A DNA stretch of 8,512 bases from positions 1 to 8,512 of the IMG/VR virus record IMGVR_UViG_3300027933_000045; one strand, 5' to 3'. The notes below the pieces were generated by a model, which saw nothing but the letters and a program-made list of their open reading frames with translations, ran no database searches and had not been told where the DNA came from. Shown one piece after another: positions 1 through 8,140 of this stretch. Numbering within the stretch: position 1 is the stretch's first letter; each line of letters begins with the position of its first letter. The position numbers and the translations under genes were made by a program.

Positions 1-277
1 CGAATCTGTGGCTCATCTGAGTGTAAGAGGCTATTCTATGTCTGACCAACTGGTGACTAGCGACTCTAGATATGTCCTCTATAGAGAAAGTATAAACGGA
101 GTGTTCCAAGACTGACCAATACCCGTGCAGTATAGCGTCTTTAATCCATGTTTCCATTTCTTCTTTGGTCATGTCTTTCTCATGATGTTCCCATCCCTTC
201 CTACTCCTGGACATCTTAGATGCTATAGCCACGACTTTCTCTCCATCTTTAGAAAAAGAAACTAATTGAATTTTCAT
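1..277 (-). CDS. thyX: Flavin-dependent thymidylate synthase ThyX, N-terminal 92 aa (runs off the left edge)
   Basis: Manual translation from ATG at 277: [92 protein letters not shown]. It contains the ThyX signature RHRxxSxxxxSxR ([13 protein letters not shown]), plus SVLEH and ISR-x3-QLVRHR. Not in the supplied ORF track. Confidence 0.95.
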
Positions 278-292
278 TTATATCATCTTTTT

Positions 293-481
293 CTATTTCA
301 ATCTCATTATTTTTTCTACTCTGGCTTTTGGATTTGTTTCTTTTTCCAATTCCTCTTGCAAGAACTTTTGTAACGCTAATCTTATCACTTCACTTCTATA
401 CATTCTATGATTCATTGCATATGTATCCATTTTTATTATTAGATCTTCATCAGCTTTGAATACAATTACTCTAAGTCCCAT
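293..481 (-). CDS. Ribbon-helix-helix (CopG-like) DNA-binding protein, 62 aa
   Basis: Alternating beta strand RVIVFKAD, helix, then RSEVIRLALQKFL (classic RHH helix B). The start abuts the upstream stop (TAAATG), with an SD-like GGGG upstream. Confidence 0.85.
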   Translation of the reverse strand: MGLRVIVFKADEDLIIKMDTYAMNHRMYRSEVIRLALQKFLQEELEKETNPKARVEKIMRLK

Positions 482-760
482 TTAAATTACCCCTTCTACT
501 CTCTTTACTGTATTCATTTTTCCTACAGTTATGCCAATTGTAAATTCTTTATCTTCTGAGAATTTATATAGCCTAATTTCAAAGTAAAAAGTTCTATTTC
601 TCATTGTTAAATAACCGTTAATTATTCTTTCCTTCTTTGTATAGAATAATATCTCGAATTTTCCAGAAAAATTTATTGCACCGTTTAAAATATTATATAT
701 ATCTTCCTCTTCCATTCTATTTATTATATTTTTAATTTCTTGAAGGGTTTGTGAGTCCAT
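482..760 (-). CDS. Hypothetical viral protein, 92 aa
   Basis: Clean ORF with SD GAGGAG just upstream and a TATA+GTC promoter at 787-798. Translationally coupled to the RHH gene. Confidence 0.75.
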   Translation of the reverse strand: MDSQTLQEIKNIINRMEEEDIYNILNGAINFSGKFEILFYTKKERIINGYLTMRNRTFYFEIRLYKFSEDKEFTIGITVGKMNTVKRVEGVI

Positions 761-782
761 TTCTCCTCAAGATCAGATAGGC

Positions 783-798
783 ATATGACGTTTAAAAA
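783..798 (-). promoter_or_regulatory. TATA+GTC promoter for the 92-aa/RHH(/thyX) unit
   Basis: Minus strand TTTTTAAA-C-GTC-ATAT. Confidence 0.7.
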
Positions 799-822
799 CA
801 TTTATATTTTTAGACTTTTAGT

Positions 823-1437
823 TCAGAACAGTGATCCATAGCATTTTCCTTTAAATTCACAGTTCTTACAGAAATATGAATTAACAGGCGGTATATTTTT
901 ATGATCTTCCATCTTTATATATTCTTTAAATTTCTTTATCCATTCTATCGCTTTTTGTATATATTCATCTATCAATTTCTTGTCTATTAAGAATTGTTTA
1001 ACTTCTCTATTTAGTCTATTCAAATATATAATATAGATATTGTCAATTTTATAATTCTGTTGCTGAAGTAGATAGTAATATATTGCAACTTGGTAAAGAT
1101 GATACTCTTTTATTTGGAAATAGTTAGTTGAGATTGTTTTTAACTCTATAAGATCATTATTACAAATTAGATCTATCCTTCCTGATATTTTCATTCCCTC
1201 AATTTCTCCATTTATTTCAATTTCAGGTTTACAATTTAGTTTTTCTTCAAAATAATGCTCAACTTTCTCATGATACTGTTCACCAAGATCAAGACTAATT
1301 TCATTTACTGCTTTCTCAAATTCAAATTTTCTACTAAAATAGCTTTTTCTAAAGCAAATTCCAATTTCGCTAGGAAATATTGTATCTTCTGGATATTTCA
1401 TTTTGAAACTTTGCTTAACAAATTCTTCATAATTCAT
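823..1437 (-). CDS. cas4: Cas4-like / RecB-family PD-(D/E)xK nuclease with Fe-S cluster cysteines (SIRV2 gp19/ORF207-like)
   Basis: N-terminal C (GICFRK), GRIDL...IELKT catalytic motifs, QVAIY (QxxxY), and C-terminal [10 protein letters not shown]. Third gene of the conserved rudivirus/lipothrixvirus cluster. SD GGTGA upstream. Confidence 0.9.
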
Positions 1438-1439
1438 AG

Positions 1440-2750
1440 TTATTCACCGCCAAAGTTGCTAAATCTCATAAAATTAATTATTTGGTTACAAATTTCATCA
1501 TTAGTTTTTTGGCCTATTTGAAGATCAATATCAAAGGCCTGAAGAATCAGTTGTATATCGATACTTTGTTCTTGTCTTCTGGACTGAAGAGTATCACAGA
1601 TTACATAATTTGTAGTTCTATTAATCTTATCTTGAATGATTTCTACTAAGGCCTTCAAAATTGAGGGATATAAAACTCTTCCATTTATTACTCTTTCATA
1701 AGTTTTTTTCACTGCTAATTGTATAATATGAATTCTGTCTAGAATAGCAGAAGTAAATATTTCATAATTGGCTAAATAGTCCTCAAGGTCAGGAGTTTTT
1801 AGTCGATCTATTGTCATAGAATATGGATTTCCTGCGTAAATAATTGGAATGCATTTTTGTATAGTTGCTGATTTGGATTCTGAACCGGCCCCTCTTGTCC
1901 ATATACAATTTTCAATTCCAGTTGATAAAGTTGAATTTATGGCACTTAATTCTTTTGCAGAAAATCCATCTTTCCAAGTTTGTATTTCGTCAAAAATTAG
2001 GCCATTTGATAAAAATACTGCACCGTACATATTATTTCTTGCATCATAAACCAAATTCGCATATGTTGGAGATTCTGTATAATAACGAAAGTTAAAGACT
2101 TCCTGAAGAATCATGAAATTTGTTGTTTTTCCAGTTCCTCTGTTGGAAATTTCGATAAAATTAATTTGTCTTTTTGTGATTGGAGATTTAAAAAGTGGCA
2201 TTAATCTAGGAAGTGTAAGAAATATATCATTTACTTCCATTTTTGTTGGGTCATATCCGAAAGCCTGAAGAAGAAGAGCATATGTTTGTTTTTCTGAATT
2301 AGCTATCTCGAATAATTCTTTTGCAATTTCATAATTATTTGGTGGTTCAATTGAATAAATATCTGATATATACCAATTTTCTACTCCTTTTCTTATTTTA
2401 ACAAACATATAGCTAGTTACTAAATTATAGAAATCATCTGGATTATCTGCAATTTGATGAGGATCAAAAGAGCCTACAAATCCATTTTGAAATCTTGCTA
2501 TTATTTCATTTCCTTTAACTTTAAAATTTGTTATCTTAGAGATGAATTTTATTTCGTTGAAAAATGGCAAGTTAGAGTTAAAATATTGTTGATCAGTCCC
2601 GCGTTTATAAGCCTTTAAAATTCCATTTTTCTTAGATTCTTCAATTTGTTTTTCACCAATTATAAGATTTAAAATTCTTTCAGTATCACGGGGGTTGTAA
2701 AAAAATGAGTGAGATTTTACTTTATCTAGAAATTGCGTTGAACTGTTCAT
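1440..2750 (-). CDS. AAA+ ATPase (MCM/BrxL-Lon-like ATPase domain; SIRV2 gp18/ORF436-like, ssDNA annealing)
   Basis: 436 aa. Walker [10 protein letters not shown], Walker B LIFDE, sensor-1 IYAGN, Arg-finger-like AILDRI. Size and position between the ssDNA-binding protein and the nuclease match the rudivirus cluster. Confidence 0.88.
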
Positions 2751-2766
2751 GTAGAAAAAAATGATC

Positions 2767-2781
2767 TATGACGTTTTAAAA
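2767..2781 (-). promoter_or_regulatory. Internal TATA+GTC promoter for the ATPase
   Basis: Minus strand TTTTAAAA-C-GTC-ATA overlapping the SSB stop codon, about 24 nt from ATG 2750. Confidence 0.6.
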
Positions 2782-3174
2782 CTCTTCCTCAACGTTCTTT
2801 TTACTTGCCTTTCTTGGTTTTTCCGCTTTTTCACTTTCTTCTTCATTACCAAGTTCCAATTCTTCTTCTCTTGGCATGTTACTATTTCTTGGAGTGAATC
2901 TTATGTATTCGTTCAGTAAGTCGGCATATTTATTTAAGAATTCGCTAATTAGTCTTAGATCTTCAGCATCACTCGCAGTTATTCCTATCTGTTTCCTAAA
3001 ATTATTAGCGGAATGTATTGTCATACTGTATCTTACCGAACTTCCGTTAGGTATTGCATTTAGCTGAACTACTATTCTCCGTATTCCCTTAATTTTTAGC
3101 ACTCTTGACATTATTTTATTTTGTTCTCTTGCTTGTTTACCTATCTCATCTATTATTTCTTTGAGGGACGCCAT
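2776..3174 (-). CDS. ssDNA-binding protein (SIRV2 gp17/ORF131-like)
   Basis: 132 aa with a basic folded core (RVLKIKGIRRIVVQLNA, NNFRKQIGI) and a disordered charged tail ending EEEF, typical of SSBs. First gene of the cluster. SD GGGAG. Confidence 0.85.
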   Translation of the reverse strand: MASLKEIIDEIGKQAREQNKIMSRVLKIKGIRRIVVQLNAIPNGSSVRYSMTIHSANNFRKQIGITASDAEDLRLISEFLNKYADLLNEYIRFTPRNSNMPREEELELGNEEESEKAEKPRKASKKNVEEEF

Positions 3175-3200
3175 ACATACTCCCTAACTAAAAACTTAGA

Positions 3201-3220
3201 ATATGACATATTTATATATT
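3201..3220 (-). promoter_or_regulatory. TATA+GTC promoter of the SSB-ATPase-nuclease operon
   Basis: Minus strand AATATATAAATATGTCATAT, nearly identical to the svtR promoter at 4308-4326. Confidence 0.72.
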
Positions 3221-3263
3221 TATAGCTATTCGGAAGAAGACAGAAGTAGATATAAAAAAATAC

Positions 3264-3554
3264 TTAACTTATTTGGAAGAATATAGATCTTATTATTTTA
3301 GCAATTTTAATATTATACTTTCTAGATAGTTCTTCTAATTTTTGGTAATATAGCTCATCTACCGTAAAAAATACTCTTTCGTCATAAATTTCTCTACTTT
3401 CCATTTCTCTAAAGTCTTTTTGTTGATTTAATATTTTGTCTATCTCTTGCTTTATTAGCTCACGTTTTTCATAAAAAAGATTTTTATACTTTGCGGGTAT
3501 TCTAAGTTCTATATACTTATTTTTTTGTTTCTTCATACTTTTCTCTTCTTTCAT
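3264..3554 (-). CDS. Basic 96-aa protein with RHH-like C-terminal domain (possibly tandem RHH)
   Basis: RVFFTVDELYYQKLEELSRKYNIKIAKIIRSIF fits the RHH pattern. The N-terminal KYIELRIPAKYK resembles a second ribbon. Confidence 0.65.
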   Translation of the reverse strand: MKEEKSMKKQKNKYIELRIPAKYKNLFYEKRELIKQEIDKILNQQKDFREMESREIYDERVFFTVDELYYQKLEELSRKYNIKIAKIIRSIFFQIS

Positions 3555-3576
3555 CTACAATATAAACGTTCCATAT

Positions 3577-3589
3577 ACATTTAAATGTC
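3577..3589. promoter_or_regulatory. Palindromic bidirectional TATA (rep / 96-aa gene)
   Basis: ACATTTAAATGT is a perfect 12-bp palindrome. TTTAAA lies 23 nt from rep ATG and 26 nt from the opposite ATG. GTC follows on the rep side. Confidence 0.6.
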
Positions 3590-3607
3590 AGGTTTTCATT
3601 TGAGGCT

Positions 3608-3955
3608 ATGGACTATGAAAAAGTTTTTAGCTTTCACTTTCTTTACGTTTATACTTATTTTATTACGATCGCAACAAATTATCGATATAATTCAGTTACT
3701 CCAATTTTTCAAAGATTTAAAAAATATGCTTATGGACATGATAAAAATTCACATATTTTTTCAGTTAAGGAATATACAACTAAGGCACATGGCTTACATT
3801 ATCATATTTTATATTTTACTAATAAAAAATTGGATTATTCTAGAGTTCATGAGAAAATGCCAAAACATTCAGATATCAGAATTCAATTAGTTCCAAAAAC
3901 AAAAAGTGACATAAAAAAAGTTTTTACTTATATGTTAAAAAATCAAATTACTTAA
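3608..3955 (+). CDS. rep: HUH-superfamily Rep endonuclease (SIRV ORF119-like replication initiator)
   Basis: Motif I-like YFITI, E..T...GLHYHIL (HUH motif II) and YMLK (YxxK motif III). About 115 aa, divergent from the SSB cluster as in rudiviruses. Confidence 0.9.
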   Translation: MDYEKVFSFHFLYVYTYFITIATNYRYNSVTPIFQRFKKYAYGHDKNSHIFSVKEYTTKAHGLHYHILYFTNKKLDYSRVHEKMPKHSDIRIQLVPKTKSDIKKVFTYMLKNQIT

Positions 3956-3956
3956 A

Positions 3957-4253
3957 TTATTTAGTTTGTTGAGTTTGCTGATTTTGATGTTGTTCAACTT
4001 TTTTCTGTGCTAAACTATTAACATCTCTTAATGTATCCATATTCAATAATGCATTAACACCAAGAGTTGTAGTATCTTTAATTGATTCAACTGCTGAAAT
4101 TGTAGATTTTGTCATTTGATCAATTGCTATTTGAAATGATTGATTTGCCTGTTTTTGATTGTATAAATGTACTACTTCTCCAACTACATAACTTGCAATT
4201 AATATGCCCATTAATGTTAGAAATCCTTCTAGTGCCACTGTTTCTAGGCTCAT
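3957..4253 (-). CDS. PVAP: virus-associated pyramid (egress/lysis) protein, SIRV2 P98 / STIV C92 family
   Basis: 98 aa with one N-terminal TM helix, then GEVVHLYNQKQ...AIDQMTKST...ESIKDTTTLGVNALLNMDTLRDVNSLA, recognisable as the SIRV P98 sequence. Confidence 0.92.
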   Translation of the reverse strand: MSLETVALEGFLTLMGILIASYVVGEVVHLYNQKQANQSFQIAIDQMTKSTISAVESIKDTTTLGVNALLNMDTLRDVNSLAQKKVEQHQNQQTQQTK

Positions 4254-4307
4254 ACTAATTCTATTTTTAGAAAGATGGTCAATAATAAACTTTTCTCAAA
4301 AAATCAA

Positions 4308-4333
4308 AATATATAAATATGTCATAATATTCA
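4308..4333 (+). promoter_or_regulatory. svtR promoter (TATA+GTC) with adjacent AATATTCA
   Basis: AATATATAAATATGTCATAATATTCA. Confidence 0.7.
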
Positions 4334-4351
4334 TTTGATGAATGAGGAAAA

Positions 4352-4513
4352 ATGGCAGAAAAGTTAAAAAGTCAAAAAGTAGTTTTTGGAATTAACATAA
4401 ATAAGGAATTAAAGTTGAAGTTGAAGAAATATTGTGTTGAGCAGGATAAAACGCTAACTGAGGCTATAGAAGAGGCAATTGTTGAATATCTGCAGAAAAG
4501 GGGAGTTAAATAA
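4352..4513 (+). CDS. svtR: SvtR-like ribbon-helix-helix transcriptional repressor, 53 aa
   Basis: Manual translation MAEKLKSQKVVFGININKELKLKLKKYCVEQDKTLTEAIEEAIVEYLQKRGVK resembles SIRV1 ORF56b (VFGI...LK.YC......LT.AIEEAI.EYLQKR). SD GAGG at 4344-4347, TATA+GTC at 4312-4323. Below the ORF-track cutoff. Confidence 0.88.
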   Translation: MAEKLKSQKVVFGININKELKLKLKKYCVEQDKTLTEAIEEAIVEYLQKRGVK

Positions 4514-4555
4514 AAATACTGAGAAAGTTTTTGAATTGAATAAAAAAACTCTTTT

Positions 4556-5074
4556 TTAACTATTAAATTTTGGCAATGTTACATTATTTTGATATTGATA
4601 TTTGCCATGATACGGATTTTCAACTGGTGTTAATGTCTTTGCAAAAATTAAATGTAGAAATCTTTGCCCAGTTTCAAGTTTTATTGGAAATTCTGAGCCT
4701 ACAATTTCTATAGTTAATTGTCCTCTAAATCCTGCATCCACAATTGTCGGCGGAATAAATAGGCCAAGTCTTGCGAAAGTTGAACGTAAATTTACAAATG
4801 CCATTACATCATTCGGGAGTTCTATATATTCAAGTGTTGTCATTAATGCATGTTCATGCGGAAAAACTATAAAATGATTAGAATTTGTGACAGTATAGAA
4901 ATCTTCAATATTTTTACCGATTTCAAAAACTTGATCTGTTTTTCTTAATCTTGCAAATTGTGGGCCAATTCTCAAATCTATGCCGTTTTCTCTTATAATT
5001 TCTTCTGAAAAAGGTCTAATAAAAATTAGGCCTTTTTCAAGATAATACTTTAAATCACGGTCACTTAAGATCAT
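4556..5074 (-). CDS. dcd: Trimeric dCTP deaminase/dUTPase family enzyme, 172 aa
   Basis: [40 protein letters not shown] and PYHGKYQ motifs, typical of Sulfolobales Dcd and the SIRV dUTPase. Exact activity cannot be determined from sequence. Confidence 0.9.
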
Positions 5075-5101
5075 GTTTGATCTGTTTTTTGACTTAAGAT
5101 A

Positions 5102-5120
5102 TGACGTATATATTTCTAGT
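5102..5120 (-). repeat. 19-bp promoter repeat, copy 1 (dcd/dUTPase promoter)
   Basis: tgacgtatatatttctagt, 18/19 identical to 5426-5444. Confidence 0.75.
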
Positions 5121-5245
5121 TATTTTAAAGCGTGAATTATTGTTAAAAATATAAGCGTAAGTAGAAAAATATCTAATGTAATATAAAAAAACATTATTAT
5201 TTTAAATTTTCTTTCAGTAAGCCATATTTTGTTTTTCTTATCCAT
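5120..5245 (-). CDS. Small single-TM protein, 41 aa
   Basis: MDKKNKIWLTERKFKIIMFFYITLDIFLLTLIFLTIIHALK: basic N-terminus plus hydrophobic C-terminal helix. Start overlaps the upstream stop, GAGGG lies upstream, and the ORF fills the gap exactly. Confidence 0.55.
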   Translation of the reverse strand: MDKKNKIWLTERKFKIIMFFYITLDIFLLTLIFLTIIHALK

Positions 5246-5408
5246 GTAGATCTAATCCCTCATCAAGTAATACAACATCATTCATGGGGGGGTATGTAGG
5301 AATGAATTTAACCCAGTGACCATAGCATAATATATAACAATCCTCTCCATCACATCTAATTTTATTTTTATCACATTCGGTTTTAAAAGACATGTTTTCC
5401 CATCTCAT
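5238..5408 (-). CDS. Small Cys-rich protein, 56 aa (alternative start 5393)
   Basis: MRWENMSFKTECDKNKIRCDGEDCYILCYGHWVKFIPTYPPMNDVVLLDEGLDLHG. Directly downstream of the TATA+GTC promoter at 5427-5439. Confidence 0.6.
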   Translation of the reverse strand: MRWENMSFKTECDKNKIRCDGEDCYILCYGHWVKFIPTYPPMNDVVLLDEGLDLHG

Positions 5409-5425
5409 CTTTACTTTTGGTTATC

Positions 5426-5444
5426 TGACATATATATTTCTAGT
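5426..5444 (-). repeat. 19-bp promoter repeat, copy 2
   Basis: tgacatatatatttctagt, 18/19 identical to 5102-5120. Confidence 0.75.
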
Positions 5445-5686
5445 CATGTCTTTCTTTTCAATATTTCAATTTCTAGTTTAAGTTCATCAATCTCATCATA
5501 AATATCAGCAAAAATATCATAAATTACAGTATATAAAAATGCAAAAATTCCAGATGCAAAAATTACTACTATTACAATATCTAACATATTTTTTGTTAGA
5601 ATTCCTAATGATAAAATTATTAAAGCTAAAAATGTAAAAAATAGAAAAAATAAGAAGAGTAATATTCTCCAAAAATCTCTATCCAT
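5444..5686 (-). CDS. Two-TM membrane protein with acidic coiled-coil tail, 80 aa
   Basis: Two long hydrophobic stretches, then DIYDEIDELKLEIEILKRK. TATA+GTC promoter at 5715-5727. Confidence 0.7.
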   Translation of the reverse strand: MDRDFWRILLFLFFLFFTFLALIILSLGILTKNMLDIVIVVIFASGIFAFLYTVIYDIFADIYDEIDELKLEIEILKRKT

Positions 5687-5741
5687 ATTTTGTCATTTTT
5701 ATTTTCAGTTTTCTGACAAATTTATAAGTTTCTATTTCAAA

Positions 5742-5864
5742 TTATTTGGAAGATTTTGTATTAAGCTCATAATATGCCTCAATCAACATTTTTCTAAATT
5801 CTTCTAAATCTTCTTTACTTTCAATCACTAAGTAACCTTCTCCATCTTTTTCTTCAATTCTCAT
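5742..5864 (-). CDS. Small acidic protein, 40 aa (in-frame alternative start 5888)
   Basis: MRIEEKDGEGYLVIESKEDLEEFRKMLIEAYYELNTKSSK, protein-like (beta-hairpin plus amphipathic helix). BRE/TATA AAAAGTTTTTTAAA ends 24 nt upstream, consistent with a leaderless mRNA. Confidence 0.65.
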   Translation of the reverse strand: MRIEEKDGEGYLVIESKEDLEEFRKMLIEAYYELNTKSSK

Positions 5865-5920
5865 GTATGAATATTTGTTATTAAACATTTAAAAAACTTT
5901 TCCTCATTCCTAATTTCTAA

Positions 5921-6220
5921 TTAAGAAGTTTCAGAGTTCGGTTTACCACAAAAAACTACAATATTAAACATATTTCTGTTATATCTCCAGTTTATAGTTA
6001 TATATTGTGGATATCGGAAAGTCTTTAGTATATATCTCAGAATTCCAATTCCCTTTTTTTCGTAAAATTTTATTGAAACATTCATTATAATTTTGATAGT
6101 TACTAGATTATTATCTTCCAAAACTAAATAATCATAAAGATTGTTAGTGTAACGTATTTTTAACCATTCAAATAGCTGAGTTGTATATTTTATACATTCG
6201 TATTTGACAATCTCATCCAT
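5921..6220 (-). CDS. Hypothetical protein, 99 aa
   Basis: ORF with AAAAAGTATTTAA promoter-like element about 25 nt upstream. No recognised motif. Confidence 0.65.
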   Translation of the reverse strand: MDEIVKYECIKYTTQLFEWLKIRYTNNLYDYLVLEDNNLVTIKIIMNVSIKFYEKKGIGILRYILKTFRYPQYITINWRYNRNMFNIVVFCGKPNSETS

Positions 6221-6383
6221 ATTACAGATTTAGCAATATGTCGATTAAATACTTTTTTCATGTTTTAGATATAGTGTCTAATACTGTATTTTATATGGGA
6301 AGTAAGAGTCAAATTGCAAACTAGTCATATACATAATATTATGAATATAGTATGTTTTCTTAGTGAAAGATCAATGACGACAA

Positions 6384-6424
6384 TAAATATTCATCATATT
6401 TATTATAAGGCGTGAATATTTAAA
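6384..6424 (+). promoter_or_regulatory. MCP promoter with 10-bp inverted repeat
   Basis: TAAATATTCA (6384-6393) and TGAATATTTA (6413-6422) with a 19-nt spacer. The right arm overlaps TTTAAA at 6419-6424. Confidence 0.6.
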
Positions 6425-6456
6425 ATATCAAATTGTGTAGATTAAATTGACCAAAA

Positions 6457-6861
6457 ATGGCAAAAGGTCACACACCAAGATCCTATTCGCAAAGATATGC
6501 TAAGTGGAGTGCAAAATTCACCTCATTTTCAAATCCTACCGTGGCATCTACTGTATTGTCTAATGTTGCACCAATCGCACAGCAAAATTTCCAAACTCAT
6601 GCCCCAAAGTTCACTGCTGTAAATGAGCAAGTATCCGCAGTTTTGAGCGAATATGGAATAACTGGGCCGAACAGGGCAATTTATCAAGGCTTTGGTCTTA
6701 AGATAGCTAGGGCACTGAACAGACTTGGAAGCGGGCCCGCATTAGCAAATATGATTAGCGGATTGAAGGCATATTATATCTCTGCATTCAATGCAAATCC
6801 AACTGTATTAGATGCAGTAACTAATATAATAACTGGATCGCCAACCGGATATGTAAGCTGA
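6457..6861 (+). CDS. Rudivirus major capsid protein (SIRV ORF134-like)
   Basis: 134 aa. MAKGHTPRSYSQRYAKW...YGITGPNRAIYQGFGLK...NIITGSPTGYVS is the characteristic rudiviral A-DNA-wrapping MCP. Confidence 0.97.
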   Translation: MAKGHTPRSYSQRYAKWSAKFTSFSNPTVASTVLSNVAPIAQQNFQTHAPKFTAVNEQVSAVLSEYGITGPNRAIYQGFGLKIARALNRLGSGPALANMISGLKAYYISAFNANPTVLDAVTNIITGSPTGYVS

Positions 6862-6876
6862 TTAATTCGTTTAAGC

Positions 6877-6900
6877 TATTTATTTTTCTTTTTTTGTTTT
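6877..6900 (+). terminator. Oligo-T archaeal terminator after MCP
   Basis: Long T-rich tract about 15-40 nt after the MCP stop, between convergent genes. Confidence 0.6.
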
Positions 6901-6907
6901 ATAAATT

Positions 6908-7072
6908 CTATTCTTCATATTTTGTTTCAACATATTCATAAGTTTTACTACTTATTCTTTTCATATTTCTCATTCTTACATTTGGGTGATGTTTTTTCAA
7001 ATGATAATTTGCATTTCTCCAAGTTTTGAATATTCTATTACAAACTGGACATTCGTATAGGAAGAGACCCAT
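6908..7072 (-). CDS. C2H2 zinc-finger protein, 54 aa (start revised from 7135 to 7072)
   Basis: YECPVCNRIFKTWRNANYHLKKHH is a canonical C2H2 finger. ATG at 7072 lies 23 nt from the minus-strand TATA at 7095-7102 and avoids overlap with the glycosyltransferase. Confidence 0.82.
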   Translation of the reverse strand: MGLFLYECPVCNRIFKTWRNANYHLKKHHPNVRMRNMKRISSKTYEYVETKYEE

Positions 7073-7077
7073 GAGAC

Positions 7078-7102
7078 TTTTTAATGTCATGACGTTTAAA
7101 AA
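7078..7102. promoter_or_regulatory. Interlocked divergent promoters sharing GTCATGAC
   Basis: TTTTTAA-T-GTCATGAC-G-TTTAAAAA. Each strand reads TATA-N-GTC with an ATG 23-25 nt downstream. Confidence 0.72.
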
Positions 7103-7108
7103 TTCTTC

Positions 7109-8140
7109 ATGGAAGTGTCGAACACAGTTCGCCACAAAACCGTAATTTTAACTATGAATTATTCTTCTATCCGAAATATTTCGGATGATATAGCCCAAGT
7201 CCTTAGAAAAAATGGTGAAATTGTCACAATTTCAACAAATCCGTATTTAATTCCACAATCTGATAAATTAATAATATTTATGCCGTTTCATCCCCCATCA
7301 TTAAATCCATATCTTTATACTTTTAGAGAATTTAAAGGAAAGAAGTACTTTTATACTACTTGTGATGGCACACCGAACTTAGAAATTGTTAATAAGTACT
7401 TATTAGAAAATATAACATTTATTCCAAATTCAAAGTTTACGGCTAAAAATTTACAAGAAGTTGGCCTACAAATTGATCTTCCAGTTTTCCACGGTTTAAA
7501 TTTTGAAATTGTAGAAAAAGCTGATAAATTAGCTATTCAGATGAAAGAAAAAATAGACAAAGATTTTCCTAGTTCCATAAAATTCGGAATAGTTTCAGGT
7601 TTGACAAAAAGAAAAAATATGGATTTGATGCTTAAGGTCTTTCAGGAAATAAATACTAAAATTCCAGAATTGGCCAAAAAAGTTCACTTTTTCGTTATTT
7701 CTCATAAGGACTTTAAGAATTATGAAGTTCCCGAAAATGTGCATTTTGTTAGTGAATTTGGTCTAAATCCCAGAGAATACATTTTCGCTTTCTATAAAAC
7801 TATGGATTTTGTTATTGTCCCTTCAGGAACTGAAGGATTCGGAATGCCGGTTCTAGAAAGCATGGCCATGGGAACTCCAGTCATTCATCAACTTATGCCC
7901 CCATTTGATGAATTTACATCTTGGCAATGGAACCTTTTGATTAAGTCTTCAGAAATTGAGGAATATTATGATAAAACTCATGGTCAAAAATGGAAAATTC
8001 ATAAGTTTGATATTCAAGATATGATAAATGCAATTATGATAGCAAACGAATTAAAAGATAAAGATGAAAGAAATAAGAATTTAAGAGAATTAGCTAAAAG
8101 ATATGATATTGAAAATTTATATGTTAGATTTTTAGAATGA
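7109..8140 (+). CDS. GT-B (GT4-like) glycosyltransferase, SIRV ORF335-like
   Basis: RKNMD and PSGTEGFGMPVLESMAMGTPVI (E-x7-E GT4 motif). Position next to the MCP gene as in rudiviruses. Confidence 0.93.
   Translation: MEVSNTVRHKTVILTMNYSSIRNISDDIAQVLRKNGEIVTISTNPYLIPQSDKLIIFMPFHPPSLNPYLYTFREFKGKKYFYTTCDGTPNLEIVNKYLLENITFIPNSKFTAKNLQEVGLQIDLPVFHGLNFEIVEKADKLAIQMKEKIDKDFPSSIKFGIVSGLTKRKNMDLMLKVFQEINTKIPELAKKVHFFVISHKDFKNYEVPENVHFVSEFGLNPREYIFAFYKTMDFVIVPSGTEGFGMPVLESMAMGTPVIHQLMPPFDEFTSWQWNLLIKSSEIEEYYDKTHGQKWKIHKFDIQDMINAIMIANELKDKDERNKNLRELAKRYDIENLYVRFLE

What the first reader, a model, noticed from the sequence alone, without database searches (positions are those of the whole stretch)
1..277. 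Unannotated, host-like thyX with foreign base composition
Seen: an ORF absent from the track carrying the full ThyX motif. Hand count gives about 43% GC over 1-240 versus about 25% over 481-720, with many G/C-ending codons (GTC, GTG, TCC, ACC, CTG, CAC, GAC), unlike its neighbours. Knowledge: the sequence reads like Sulfolobales cellular ThyX, and ThyX is patchy among rudiviruses (I recall it in ARV1 but not SIRV1/2). Inference: a recent, unameliorated capture from a host, appended 15 nt behind the RHH gene so it is probably read from the same promoter. It could also identify the host lineage.
Basis: partly seen in the sequence, partly recalled or inferred. Interest (0 to 1): 0.65.

Follow-up and report, generated by a model that had tools for sequence, protein, structure and literature searches.

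The report
Truncated viral thyX, kin to Metallosphaera's
The left end of this hot-spring rudivirus contig holds the first 92 codons of a working thymidylate synthase gene (thyX); it really is richer in G+C than its neighbours and its closest cellular relative is the Metallosphaera yellowstonensis gene, but a whole lineage of related viruses carries it in the same place, so it is not a fresh capture.

Summary
The minus strand 277..2 encodes the first 92 residues of ThyX, including the RHR..S....S.R motif, and the frame runs off the contig end. GC is 43.3% over 1-240 against 25.4% over 481-720. GC3 is 0.45 against 0.10-0.31 in the other genes. The start lies 15 nt after an RHH gene.

The reading "recent, unameliorated, private capture" does not hold.
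- About 20 close and at least 15 distant SIRV-like metagenomic contigs carry orf92-RHH-thyX with the same spacing.
- thyX has diverged among them about as much as its neighbours have.
- In relatives the gene is complete (251-257 aa) and is followed by rudiviral terminal DNA, not host chromosome.
- The nearest cellular gene found is only 86-87% identical in nucleotides, with GC3 0.70.

What survives is specific. The conserved core of this viral clade's thyX forms a 100/100 clade with the chromosomal thyX of Metallosphaera yellowstonensis. A CRISPR repeat exact to that organism flanks a spacer against this virus, although two other repeat types also target it. Composition favours host-to-virus transfer with partial amelioration. 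Tree tests leave the direction open.

Viral thyX in Sulfolobales viruses is already known, so this is a new member of a known kind.

The parts
2..277 (-). thyX, first 92 codons of a FAD-dependent thymidylate synthase; the frame runs off the contig end
   Evidence: Relatives with 94-99% nt identity hold ORFs of up to 251-257 aa.
5..43 (-). ThyX signature motif [13 protein letters not shown] (residues 79-91)
   Evidence: Translation. The motif lies in the aligned part of the PF02511 and TIGR02170 matches.
278..292 (-). 15-nt spacer between the RHH stop and the thyX start, with a Shine-Dalgarno-like GATGA at 287-283 (relatives have GGTG or GGAG)
   Evidence: A gap of about this length (15-18 nt) is kept in L056, L057, L059 and L065-L066, and the motif sits at the same distance in two diverged clades.
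293..481 (-). Ribbon-helix-helix regulator, aCcr1/SIRV2 gp21-like, the cistron just upstream of thyX
   Evidence: NCBIfam NF053762 aCcr1_fam at E 2.3e-15, 56.2 bits against a cut-off of 60. phrog_876 transcriptional repressor at E 5.8e-16. Family biology from PMC9976892 and PMC9976878.
482..760 (-). orf92, first gene of the conserved orf92-RHH-thyX run; homologue of SIRV9 gp11
   Evidence: phrog_8868 at E 8e-17. 39% aa identity to SIRV9 gp11. Present in all viral-context contigs.
4556..5074 (-). dCTP deaminase/dUTPase-fold enzyme, the likely supplier of deoxyuridine nucleotide to ThyX
   Evidence: TIGR02274 dCTP_deam at 176 bits against a cut-off of 92.8. PF22769 at E 1.8e-32.
575..616 (.). 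Protospacer found in an RNA library between copies of the repeat GTTTCATCCTCAAAGGAATTGAAAG, which is exact (104 copies) only in M. yellowstonensis MK1 among the 47 Sulfolobaceae genomes searched
   Evidence: (loose ends in run X17).

Best explanation
The feature is the 5' third of a functional viral thyX, cut off by the end of the contig. It is the last cistron of a conserved orf92 - RHH (aCcr1/gp21-like) - thyX unit in a Yellowstone-type, SIRV-like rudivirus lineage.

Shown:
- the gene identity and motif;
- the composition anomaly at synonymous sites;
- the conserved position and spacing in many related viral contigs;
- intact full-length genes in close relatives, with mostly synonymous differences, which indicates purifying selection;
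- a 100/100-supported clade joining the conserved core of this viral clade's thyX with the chromosomal thyX of Metallosphaera yellowstonensis and its nearest kin.

Inferred:
(1) The gene is translated from a polycistronic RNA that starts upstream of the RHH gene.
(2) Together with the viral dCTP deaminase (4556-5074) it makes dTMP for a genome that is 72% A+T, while the RHH protein holds the host cell cycle.
(3) The G+C-rich synonymous sites are left over from sequence that came from a G+C-rich M. yellowstonensis-like host. This sequence was most likely taken in by recombination into a thyX already resident at this locus, before the present viral clade radiated. It is now about half-way ameliorated: GC3 is 0.70 in the host, 0.35-0.45 in these viruses, and about 0.2 as the viral background.
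For: Identity.

Composition.

Residence in the lineage:
- IMG/VR and metagenome contigs with RHH, orf92 and Cas4 next to thyX.
- Per-gene identities to the window: thyX 85-99% against 52-98% for the neighbours.
- In L057, a complete 257-aa thyX is followed by DNA matching SIRV8/9 termini.
- Contigs of independent runs cross 277-293.

Cellular kin:
- thyX is single-copy in the two nearest genomes checked, G001 and G002, and lies in a conserved 415aa-DUF2175-thyX-nuoA-nuoC-nuoD context across the Sulfolobaceae loci examined.
- The window is 87% nt identical to M. yellowstonensis over 1-247, and 95% aa / 87% nt over residues 11-92. Other Metallosphaera are 71-75% nt identical to M. yellowstonensis there.

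Trees:
- The core DNA tree gives 17 viral plus 10 M. yellowstonensis-group rows as one clade at 100/100.
- A smaller set using codon positions 1+2 also gives 100/100.

Direction:
- 21 of the 31 differences from the host gene are third-position host G/C against virus A/T.
- At two of the four fixed non-synonymous differences the host keeps the state of the two other Metallosphaera compared, and at a third the state common to cells.
- Within the viral gene, GC3 is raised in the segments that resemble the host gene (0.30-0.46) and is virus-like in the variable insert and tail (0.13-0.29).
- The sister SIRV-like clade has thyX at the same locus with GC3 0.15-0.25, so the protein does not demand high GC3.

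Operon: the conserved 15-nt gap and SD-like motif; RNA-library contigs cover 1-353 and 82-319.

Host contact: an exact MK1-type repeat flanks a spacer to 575-616, and MK1 holds a 30/34 match to the capsid gene in a repeat-flanked stretch.
Against: - Direction is not settled. In the best tree the host group is nested among viral rows, which read literally means virus-to-host.
- AU tests reject neither viral monophyly (p 0.44) nor placing the whole clade with the other Metallosphaera (p 0.23).
- Protein trees of the whole gene put the viral clade as a weak sister of another Sulfolobaceae MAG, on a 0.29 stem. They do not reject one origin for both SIRV-like clades (p 0.34).
- Only 92 codons are in the window. 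Everything about the rest of the gene comes from relatives.
- Contigs in RNA libraries do not prove a single transcript.
- Two other CRISPR repeat types also target the virus. One genome has a perfect 30/30 spacer, so M. yellowstonensis need not be the present host.
Confidence: 0.62

Rival explanations
1. Virus-to-host. The M. yellowstonensis lineage replaced the conserved core of its own thyX with sequence from this rudiviral clade, then raised its GC3 to 0.70. On this reading the viral gene's raised GC3 has another cause.
For: - The host group is nested inside viral diversity, with starred basal viral branches.
- In the core, the M. yellowstonensis gene leaves the other Metallosphaera.
- Holding it with them costs 32-44 lnL, with AU p 0.035-0.11.
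- The host group sits on a 0.24 stem, as expected for amelioration upwards.
- The host's C-terminal tail stays Metallosphaera-like while its core does not.
Against: - AU does not reject viral monophyly (p 0.44).
- Host GC3 is uniform along the gene, 0.57-0.78.
- At two of the four fixed non-synonymous differences in the core the host keeps the state of the two other Metallosphaera compared, and at a third the state common to cells.
- This reading leaves unexplained why GC3 in the viral gene is raised in the host-like segments, and why the sister viral clade is at 0.15-0.25.
- Parallel G/C-to-A/T loss in the viral lines can mis-root such a tree.
Confidence: 0.22
2. One reading: a recent capture by this particular genome of a whole host thyX, still unameliorated, appended behind the RHH gene.
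For: - GC3 is 0.45 against about 0.2.
- The window has the highest GC3 and the highest nucleotide identity to the host gene of its clade.
- Fresh copies do exist elsewhere. Contigs L113 and L116 carry thyX 97.5-98.8% identical to M. yellowstonensis in 36-38% GC flanks.
Against: - The module is shared by dozens of related contigs, with the same 15-nt gap.
- thyX divergence is about the same as the neighbours' divergence.
- The best cellular match is 86-87%.
- GC3 is well below the donor-like 0.70.
- In relatives the insert and tail of the gene are not Metallosphaera-like.
Confidence: 0.04
3. No transfer signal at all: the raised G+C reflects constraint on a conserved enzyme (amino-acid and codon choice), as in the capsid gene.
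For: - The capsid gene is also 42% GC.
- The N-terminal part of ThyX is the most conserved part in every comparison.
Against: - The excess is at third positions, whereas in the capsid gene it is at position 2.
- Orthologous thyX at the same locus in the sister SIRV-like clade has GC3 0.15-0.25.
- Synonymous codon choices are shared specifically with the M. yellowstonensis gene.
- The N-minus-C identity contrast with that gene gives the top 3 of 990 pairs.
Confidence: 0.08
4. Assembly artefact: host thyX reads were joined to a viral contig end.
For: - The gene sits at the very end of a metagenomic contig.
- Summed depth over 1-200 in one run is about 7 times that of the rest.
- Hybrid-looking contigs exist in these data (L115, L118).
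Against: - The same join is present in many independent assemblies and runs, with co-varying divergence.
- The sequence is 13% different from the host gene.
- The high depth is explained by other thyX-bearing genomes at 90% likeness or more being laid on the conserved stretch.
Confidence: 0.02

Closest known systems
ThyX of other Sulfolobales viruses: rudiviruses SRV (ORF257) and ARV1 (ORF250); STSV1/2/4, ATSV, SMV3
   Same: Same enzyme family. They are 79-86% aa identical over the 92 residues. Each viral ThyX sits next to a cellular Sulfolobaceae ThyX in the tree: SRV with Stygiolobus, ATSV with Acidianus hospitalis, ARV1 and STSV each with a cell genome. SRV likewise shows thyX GC3 0.40 in 27% GC flanks.
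   Different: The genomic place differs. In SRV thyX lies upstream of the ATPase gene near the terminal repeat, and in ARV1 it lies next to a glycosyl transferase gene. Here it is the distal cistron after an RHH gene. It belongs to a different ThyX branch, the one holding M. yellowstonensis.
Cultured SIRV-type rudiviruses (SIRV4-11, Usarudivirus; SIRV1/2)
   Same: 79-81% nt identity over window 822-8140, with the same order of Cas4, ATPase, dCTP deaminase, capsid and glycosyl transferase genes. SIRV9 also has the orf92 homologue gp11.
   Different: None of the 24 records has thyX. In SIRV9 the orf92 homologue is followed by an unrelated small gene, gp10, where the window has RHH + thyX.
Chromosomal thyX of Metallosphaera yellowstonensis MK1
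   Same: 87% nt identity over window 1-247. 95% aa identity over residues 11-92. Joint clade at 100/100 on the conserved core.
   Different: GC3 is 0.70 against 0.45. It is chromosomal, single-copy, and lies between DUF2175 and nuoA. Its variable insert and C-terminal tail differ from the viral clade's.
aCcr1 / SIRV2 gp21 RHH cell-cycle regulators (PMC9976878, PMC9976892)
   Same: The gene just upstream of thyX matches the aCcr1 family model (E 2.3e-15) and has the RHH layout. Viral homologues are reported to block cell division and raise DNA content.
   Different: The score of 56.2 is just under the family cut-off of 60. Adjacency to thyX is not described in those papers: 'thymidylate' occurs 0 times in PMC9976892.

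Membership tests
ThyX / Thy1, FAD-dependent thymidylate synthase (PF02511, TIGR02170) | Match to the family profile above its threshold | tested here: met
   PF02511 at 84.2 bits against a cut-off of 24.8. TIGR02170 at 86.6 bits against 87.9 for the 92-aa fragment, and 197-201 bits for the full-length genes of relatives L056 and L057.
ThyX / Thy1, FAD-dependent thymidylate synthase (PF02511, TIGR02170) | ThyX signature motif RHRxxSxxxxSxR | tested here: met
   [13 protein letters not shown] at residues 79-91, conserved in all aligned relatives.
ThyX / Thy1, FAD-dependent thymidylate synthase (PF02511, TIGR02170) | Complete domain (C-terminal two thirds) with an open frame | tested here: inconclusive
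   Not in the window, because the contig ends. L096, 98.6% nt identical, stays open for at least 241 codons. L097 and L057 have complete ORFs of 251 and 257 aa.
ThyX / Thy1, FAD-dependent thymidylate synthase (PF02511, TIGR02170) | dUMP-to-dTMP activity with FAD and methylene-tetrahydrofolate | not testable with these tools
   Needs an enzyme assay or a complementation test.
Rudiviridae, SIRV-like | Rudiviral major capsid protein and collinear core genes | tested here: met
   PF12193 at E 2.2e-75 for 6457-6861. 79-81% nt identity to SIRV4-11 over 822-8140.
aCcr1 family RHH regulator (NF053762), for the upstream gene | Score at or above the curated cut-off | tested here: inconclusive
   56.2 bits against a cut-off of 60, E 2.3e-15, covering the whole 38-position model.
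Recently transferred, unameliorated gene | Near-identity to a donor genome, and donor-like composition | tested here: not met
   The best cellular match is 86-87% nt identical in the core. GC3 is 0.45 against 0.70.

The most novel reading that the evidence does not exclude
thyX acts as a standing stretch of homology between Sulfolobaceae chromosomes and several of their viruses. Patches of sequence pass repeatedly between a resident viral thyX and the host's own gene, and mobile elements may even recombine into the chromosome through it. The window's gene would then be one snapshot of this traffic: a conserved core like M. yellowstonensis, with an insert and tail like other rudiviral thyX. Contigs L113 and L116 would be a fresher snapshot (thyX 97.5-98.8% identical to the host inside 36-38% GC, ORFan, phrog-bearing flanks). 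L115 would be a hybrid (element flank - thyX - host nuo genes).
Probability: 0.3. Interest if true: 0.6.

Novelty: new member of a known kind. Interest (0 to 1): 0.36.

Why it matters
Viral thymidylate synthases taken from hosts are a textbook case of auxiliary metabolic genes, and ThyX was already known in SRV, ARV1 and the large spindle viruses. Three things are modestly new here.

1. A whole, uncultured branch of Yellowstone SIRV-like viruses carries thyX as a bicistronic unit with a cell-cycle-regulator-like RHH gene. The cultured SIRVs lack it.
2. This thyX has a specific, well-supported tie to one host species, M. yellowstonensis, and CRISPR evidence agrees. That gives a testable host hypothesis for an uncultured virus.
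3. The same data sets contain other elements with near-identical copies of that host gene, so the traffic can be studied at several ages.

It does not change what is known about how ThyX works.

Tried and rejected
- Simple two-part mosaic. N- and C-part protein trees differ, and informative sites at codon positions 1+2 give Fisher p 4e-4 with a break near column 95. But AU tests do not reject the alternatives (p 0.08-0.19). Sliding windows show that likeness to the host returns in columns 141-210. So the pattern is 'conserved core against variable insert and tail', not one break.
- Window as sister of the M. yellowstonensis gene. This vanished with denser sampling.
- Independent origin of thyX in the two SIRV-like clades. 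The protein tree suggests it, but one clade is not rejected (p 0.34).
- Polarising singletons among five relatives to detect ongoing G/C loss. thyX gave 9 S>W against 14 W>S, and the flanks gave 69 against 154. Per-site rates are alike, so the test is uninformative.
- RHH adjacent to thyX in cells, as a block capture. Not seen in Sulfolobaceae loci.
- tRNA and Rfam scans of the window found nothing.
- Not run: the search for homologous proteins and the search of protein representatives. The operators flagged them as costly, and tblastn, genome and contig scans had already settled the family. Structure and complex prediction were also not run, because the family is not in doubt.
- Operators' limits: read laying was given 3000 letters. 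No other genetic code was used.

Full report
WHAT IS THERE

The window is a complete 8512-base virus record. In the metagenome collection it is contig Ga0208549_101348 (L101). It is a SIRV-like rudivirus:
- The capsid protein gene at 6457-6861 matches PF12193 at E 2.2e-75.
- Positions 822-8140 are 79-81% identical in nucleotides to SIRV4-11, with the same gene order.

On the minus strand an ORF starts at 277 and is still open at position 2. Its 92 residues match Pfam Thy1 (E 1.4e-23) and NCBIfam thyX (86.6 bits). They include the motif [13 protein letters not shown].

- GC is 0.433 over 1-240 and 0.254 over 481-720.
- The excess is synonymous. GC3 is 0.446 against 0.10-0.31 in the fifteen other ORFs.
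- The capsid gene is equally G+C-rich, but through codon position 2 (0.50).
- The thyX start lies 15 nt after the stop of a 62-aa RHH gene at 293-481.

IS IT A CHIMERA, OR PRIVATE TO THIS GENOME? NO.

- IMG/VR holds four contigs collinear with the window from thyX through the ATPase gene, at 82-90% nt identity (L056-L059). A further set is collinear at about 68% in 1-760 and about 75% in the core (L065-L075).
- The metagenome scan adds about 15 more close relatives, with thyX 84-98.8% identical to the window. Nearly all have RHH, orf92 and usually Cas4 beside thyX.
- In L057 the thyX is complete (257 aa). The 5.5 kb beyond it matches the terminal regions of SIRV8 and SIRV9.
- Contigs from independent sequencing runs cross the thyX/RHH junction. 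One of them runs about 208 nt past the window's first base.
- Among close relatives thyX is 85-99% identical to the window, while the neighbouring genes range from 52% to 98% in a gene-by-gene mosaic. So thyX has been in this lineage as long as these genomes have been diverging.
- Between the two SIRV-like clades, orf92 and RHH are only 42-58% aa identical while ThyX is 76-80%.
- The spacer is 15 nt in most contigs of both clades that I measured and 18 nt in L065.
- SIRV9, a cultured Yellowstone virus, has the orf92 homologue followed by an unrelated small gene, and no thyX. RHH + thyX therefore behaves as a two-gene module.

HOST-LIKE? YES, AND SPECIFICALLY.

Viral ThyX of isolates are 79-86% identical to the fragment. 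Chromosomal ThyX of a Sulfolobaceae MAG and of Metallosphaera yellowstonensis MK1 are 90% and 89% identical. Other Sulfolobaceae are at 75-85%. There is then a gap down to about 50%.

The nearest cellular genes are native. thyX is single-copy in the two nearest genomes checked. Across the Sulfolobaceae loci examined it lies in a conserved 415aa-DUF2175-thyX-nuoA-nuoC-nuoD neighbourhood, and the MK1 flanks are closest to those of other Metallosphaera.

At the nucleotide level MK1 stands out:
- It is 87% identical over window 1-247.
- It is 95% aa and 87% nt identical over residues 11-92. MK1 is only 71-75% nt identical to other Metallosphaera there.
- Synonymous third-position identity to the window is 0.64 for MK1 (n=73), against 0.34-0.52 for other G+C-rich Sulfolobaceae and at most 0.59 for any sequence outside the clade, MK1 and the L003 MAG. 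Codon choices are visibly shared.
- The excess of N-part over C-part identity for MK1 against the viral clade gives the top three of 990 pairs.

TREES

The whole-protein tree scatters viral ThyX among cellular ones in at least seven places. SRV sits with Stygiolobus, ATSV with Acidianus hospitalis, and so on. The window clade (100/100) sits on a 0.29 stem, weakly beside the MAG.

On the conserved core (columns 11-90 and 141-210, 450 nt) the results are:
- With 17 viral rows and 10 rows of the M. yellowstonensis group, all 27 form one clade at 100/100.
- With a smaller set, codon positions 1+2 alone also give 100/100.
- In the best tree the host group is nested among viral rows.
- AU tests reject neither viral monophyly (p 0.44) nor the whole clade joining the other Metallosphaera (p 0.23).

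The kinship is solid. The direction of transfer is not.

DIRECTION AND AGE

Evidence for host-to-virus:
- 21 of the 31 differences from MK1 in the N-core are third-position host G/C against virus A/T. At two of the four fixed non-synonymous differences MK1 keeps the state of the two other Metallosphaera compared, and at a third the state shared by the cellular sequences.
- Inside the viral gene, GC3 is high where it resembles MK1 and virus-like (0.13-0.29) in the variable insert and the tail.
- MK1's GC3 is even along the gene.
- The sister viral clade has GC3 0.15-0.25 at the same locus.

Evidence for virus-to-host:
- The nested topology.
- MK1's core leaving its genus (AU p 0.035-0.11).

In relatives, the insert and tail of the viral gene are nearer to other rudiviral thyX than to MK1. 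I therefore favour replacement of parts of a resident gene by recombination over de novo capture of a whole gene.

On age:
- No cellular-context sequence closer than 86-87% was found in the species genomes or the metagenome contigs.
- GC3 lies midway between the 0.70 of the nearest cellular relatives and the viral background.
- The event precedes the radiation of a clade whose members now differ by up to 15%.

'Recent and unameliorated' is therefore wrong. 'Host-related and partly ameliorated' fits.

HOW IT LIKELY WORKS

ThyX makes dTMP from dUMP. The same genome encodes a dCTP deaminase-type enzyme at 4556-5074 (176 bits), which can supply the deoxyuridine nucleotide. A genome that is 72% A+T has an obvious need for thymidylate. 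This step is inference from the known roles of these families.

The gene upstream is an aCcr1/gp21-like RHH protein. Viral members of that family block host cell division and raise DNA content (PMC9976892, PMC9976878).

Several observations argue that thyX is a distal cistron:
- The conserved 15-nt gap.
- The Shine-Dalgarno-like GGTG/GGAG (GATG in the window) 5-8 nt before the start, in both viral clades.
- RNA-library contigs covering 1-353 and 82-319.

None of these proves a single transcript.

HOST CLUES FROM CRISPR

In two metatranscriptome libraries, short window pieces are flanked by CRISPR repeats.
- The repeat around 575-616 is exact, in 104 copies, only in M. yellowstonensis MK1 among the 47 Sulfolobaceae species genomes searched.
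- MK1 itself has a 30/34 match to the capsid gene within a repeat-flanked stretch.
- The repeat around 2005-2048 is exact in another genome, G168. That genome also holds four spacers to the window, one of them 30/30.
- The repeat around 2231-2262 is exact in two further genomes.
- The thyX of those other genomes is only 74-84% like the window's, or barely matches at all.

thyX and CRISPR thus agree on contact with M. yellowstonensis, but do not single it out as the host.

VERDICT

The feature is an ordinary kind of thing, a viral auxiliary thyX. It is newly seen in SIRV-like viruses, in a conserved RHH-thyX module, and it has a specific tie to M. yellowstonensis.

The most interesting open reading is recurrent exchange through thyX. 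Other contigs from the same springs prompt this reading: they carry thyX 97.5-98.8% identical to MK1 inside low-GC, ORFan flanks, and there is one hybrid contig. These could be assembly chimeras and need long reads.

Noticed in passing
L113 (Ga0209012_1013625), L116 (Ga0080003_1002421), L115 (Ga0208661_100319), L118 (Ga0208028_100044), L123, L132: L113 and L116 match M. yellowstonensis at 97.5-98.8% nt over the thyX ORF only (GC3 0.71). Their flanks are 36-38% GC and ORFan, one ORF hits phrog_17595, and the two contigs share flanks at 89%. L115 has the same upstream flank, then thyX, then host nuoA/nuoC at 99.5%. L118 has host pieces between low-GC flanks. L123 and L132 share one flanking ORF (88% aa) and upstream DNA (85% nt) with L116 and may be the same kind of element; their thyX is 84% like the host's. 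This is either a fresh capture or integration through thyX, or assembly chimeras.
   Followed up: partly
window 575-616, 2005-2048, 2231-2262; also 3572-3601, 3752-3783, 6662-6725, 8089-8137: Protospacers. Three window pieces appear in RNA libraries between three different CRISPR repeats. These repeats are exact in M. yellowstonensis MK1, in genome G168, and in genomes G175 and G176 respectively. G168 holds four spacers to the window (one 30/30), and MK1 holds one 30/34 match. None lies in thyX.
   Followed up: yes
window 293-481 (-): The RHH gene next to thyX is aCcr1/SIRV2 gp21-like (cell-cycle regulator family), 56.2 bits against a cut-off of 60. Among close relatives it varies from 52% to 98% nt identity to the window while thyX beside it stays at 85-99%, so it is swapped independently.
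   Followed up: partly
window 6457-6861 (+): The capsid gene is a second G+C island (42%), driven by codon position 2 (0.50) with GC3 0.31. It is a composition island that does not need transfer to explain it.
   Followed up: yes
window 5742-5888 (-): A 48-aa ORF (phrog_30262, E 5e-27) is 83% nt and 74-80% aa identical to stretches of two different host genomes (G001 contig 17 and G168), although its G+C is virus-like. Its function and the reason for the sharing are unknown.
   Followed up: partly
window 1-3098 against L056-L059, L096-L111: There is strong gene-by-gene mosaicism among co-occurring relatives. For example, L097 is 94% in thyX, 54% in RHH, 95% in orf92, 96% in Cas4 and 80% in the ATPase gene. 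This points to frequent recombination among these rudiviruses.
   Followed up: partly
window 1-200 in run X1: Summed contig depth is about 75,000 over 1-200 against roughly 3,000-33,000 elsewhere. Most likely thyX of other genomes at 90% likeness or more is being laid on the conserved stretch.
   Followed up: no
window 4563-4831: The dCTP deaminase gene is 73% nt identical to the chromosomal homologue of genome G168. It is a second nucleotide-metabolism gene with a cellular counterpart, but it has virus-like GC3 (0.16).
   Followed up: no
L024 (SMV3, KP282677.1 45994-46753); L012 (Aramenus MAG contig24, 8 kb): SMV3's thyX is annotated as two overlapping ORFs, so the frame is broken. One MAG holds a second thyX on a short contig with no detectable DUF2175 or nuo neighbours, which probably means a viral contig was binned with the host.
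   Followed up: no
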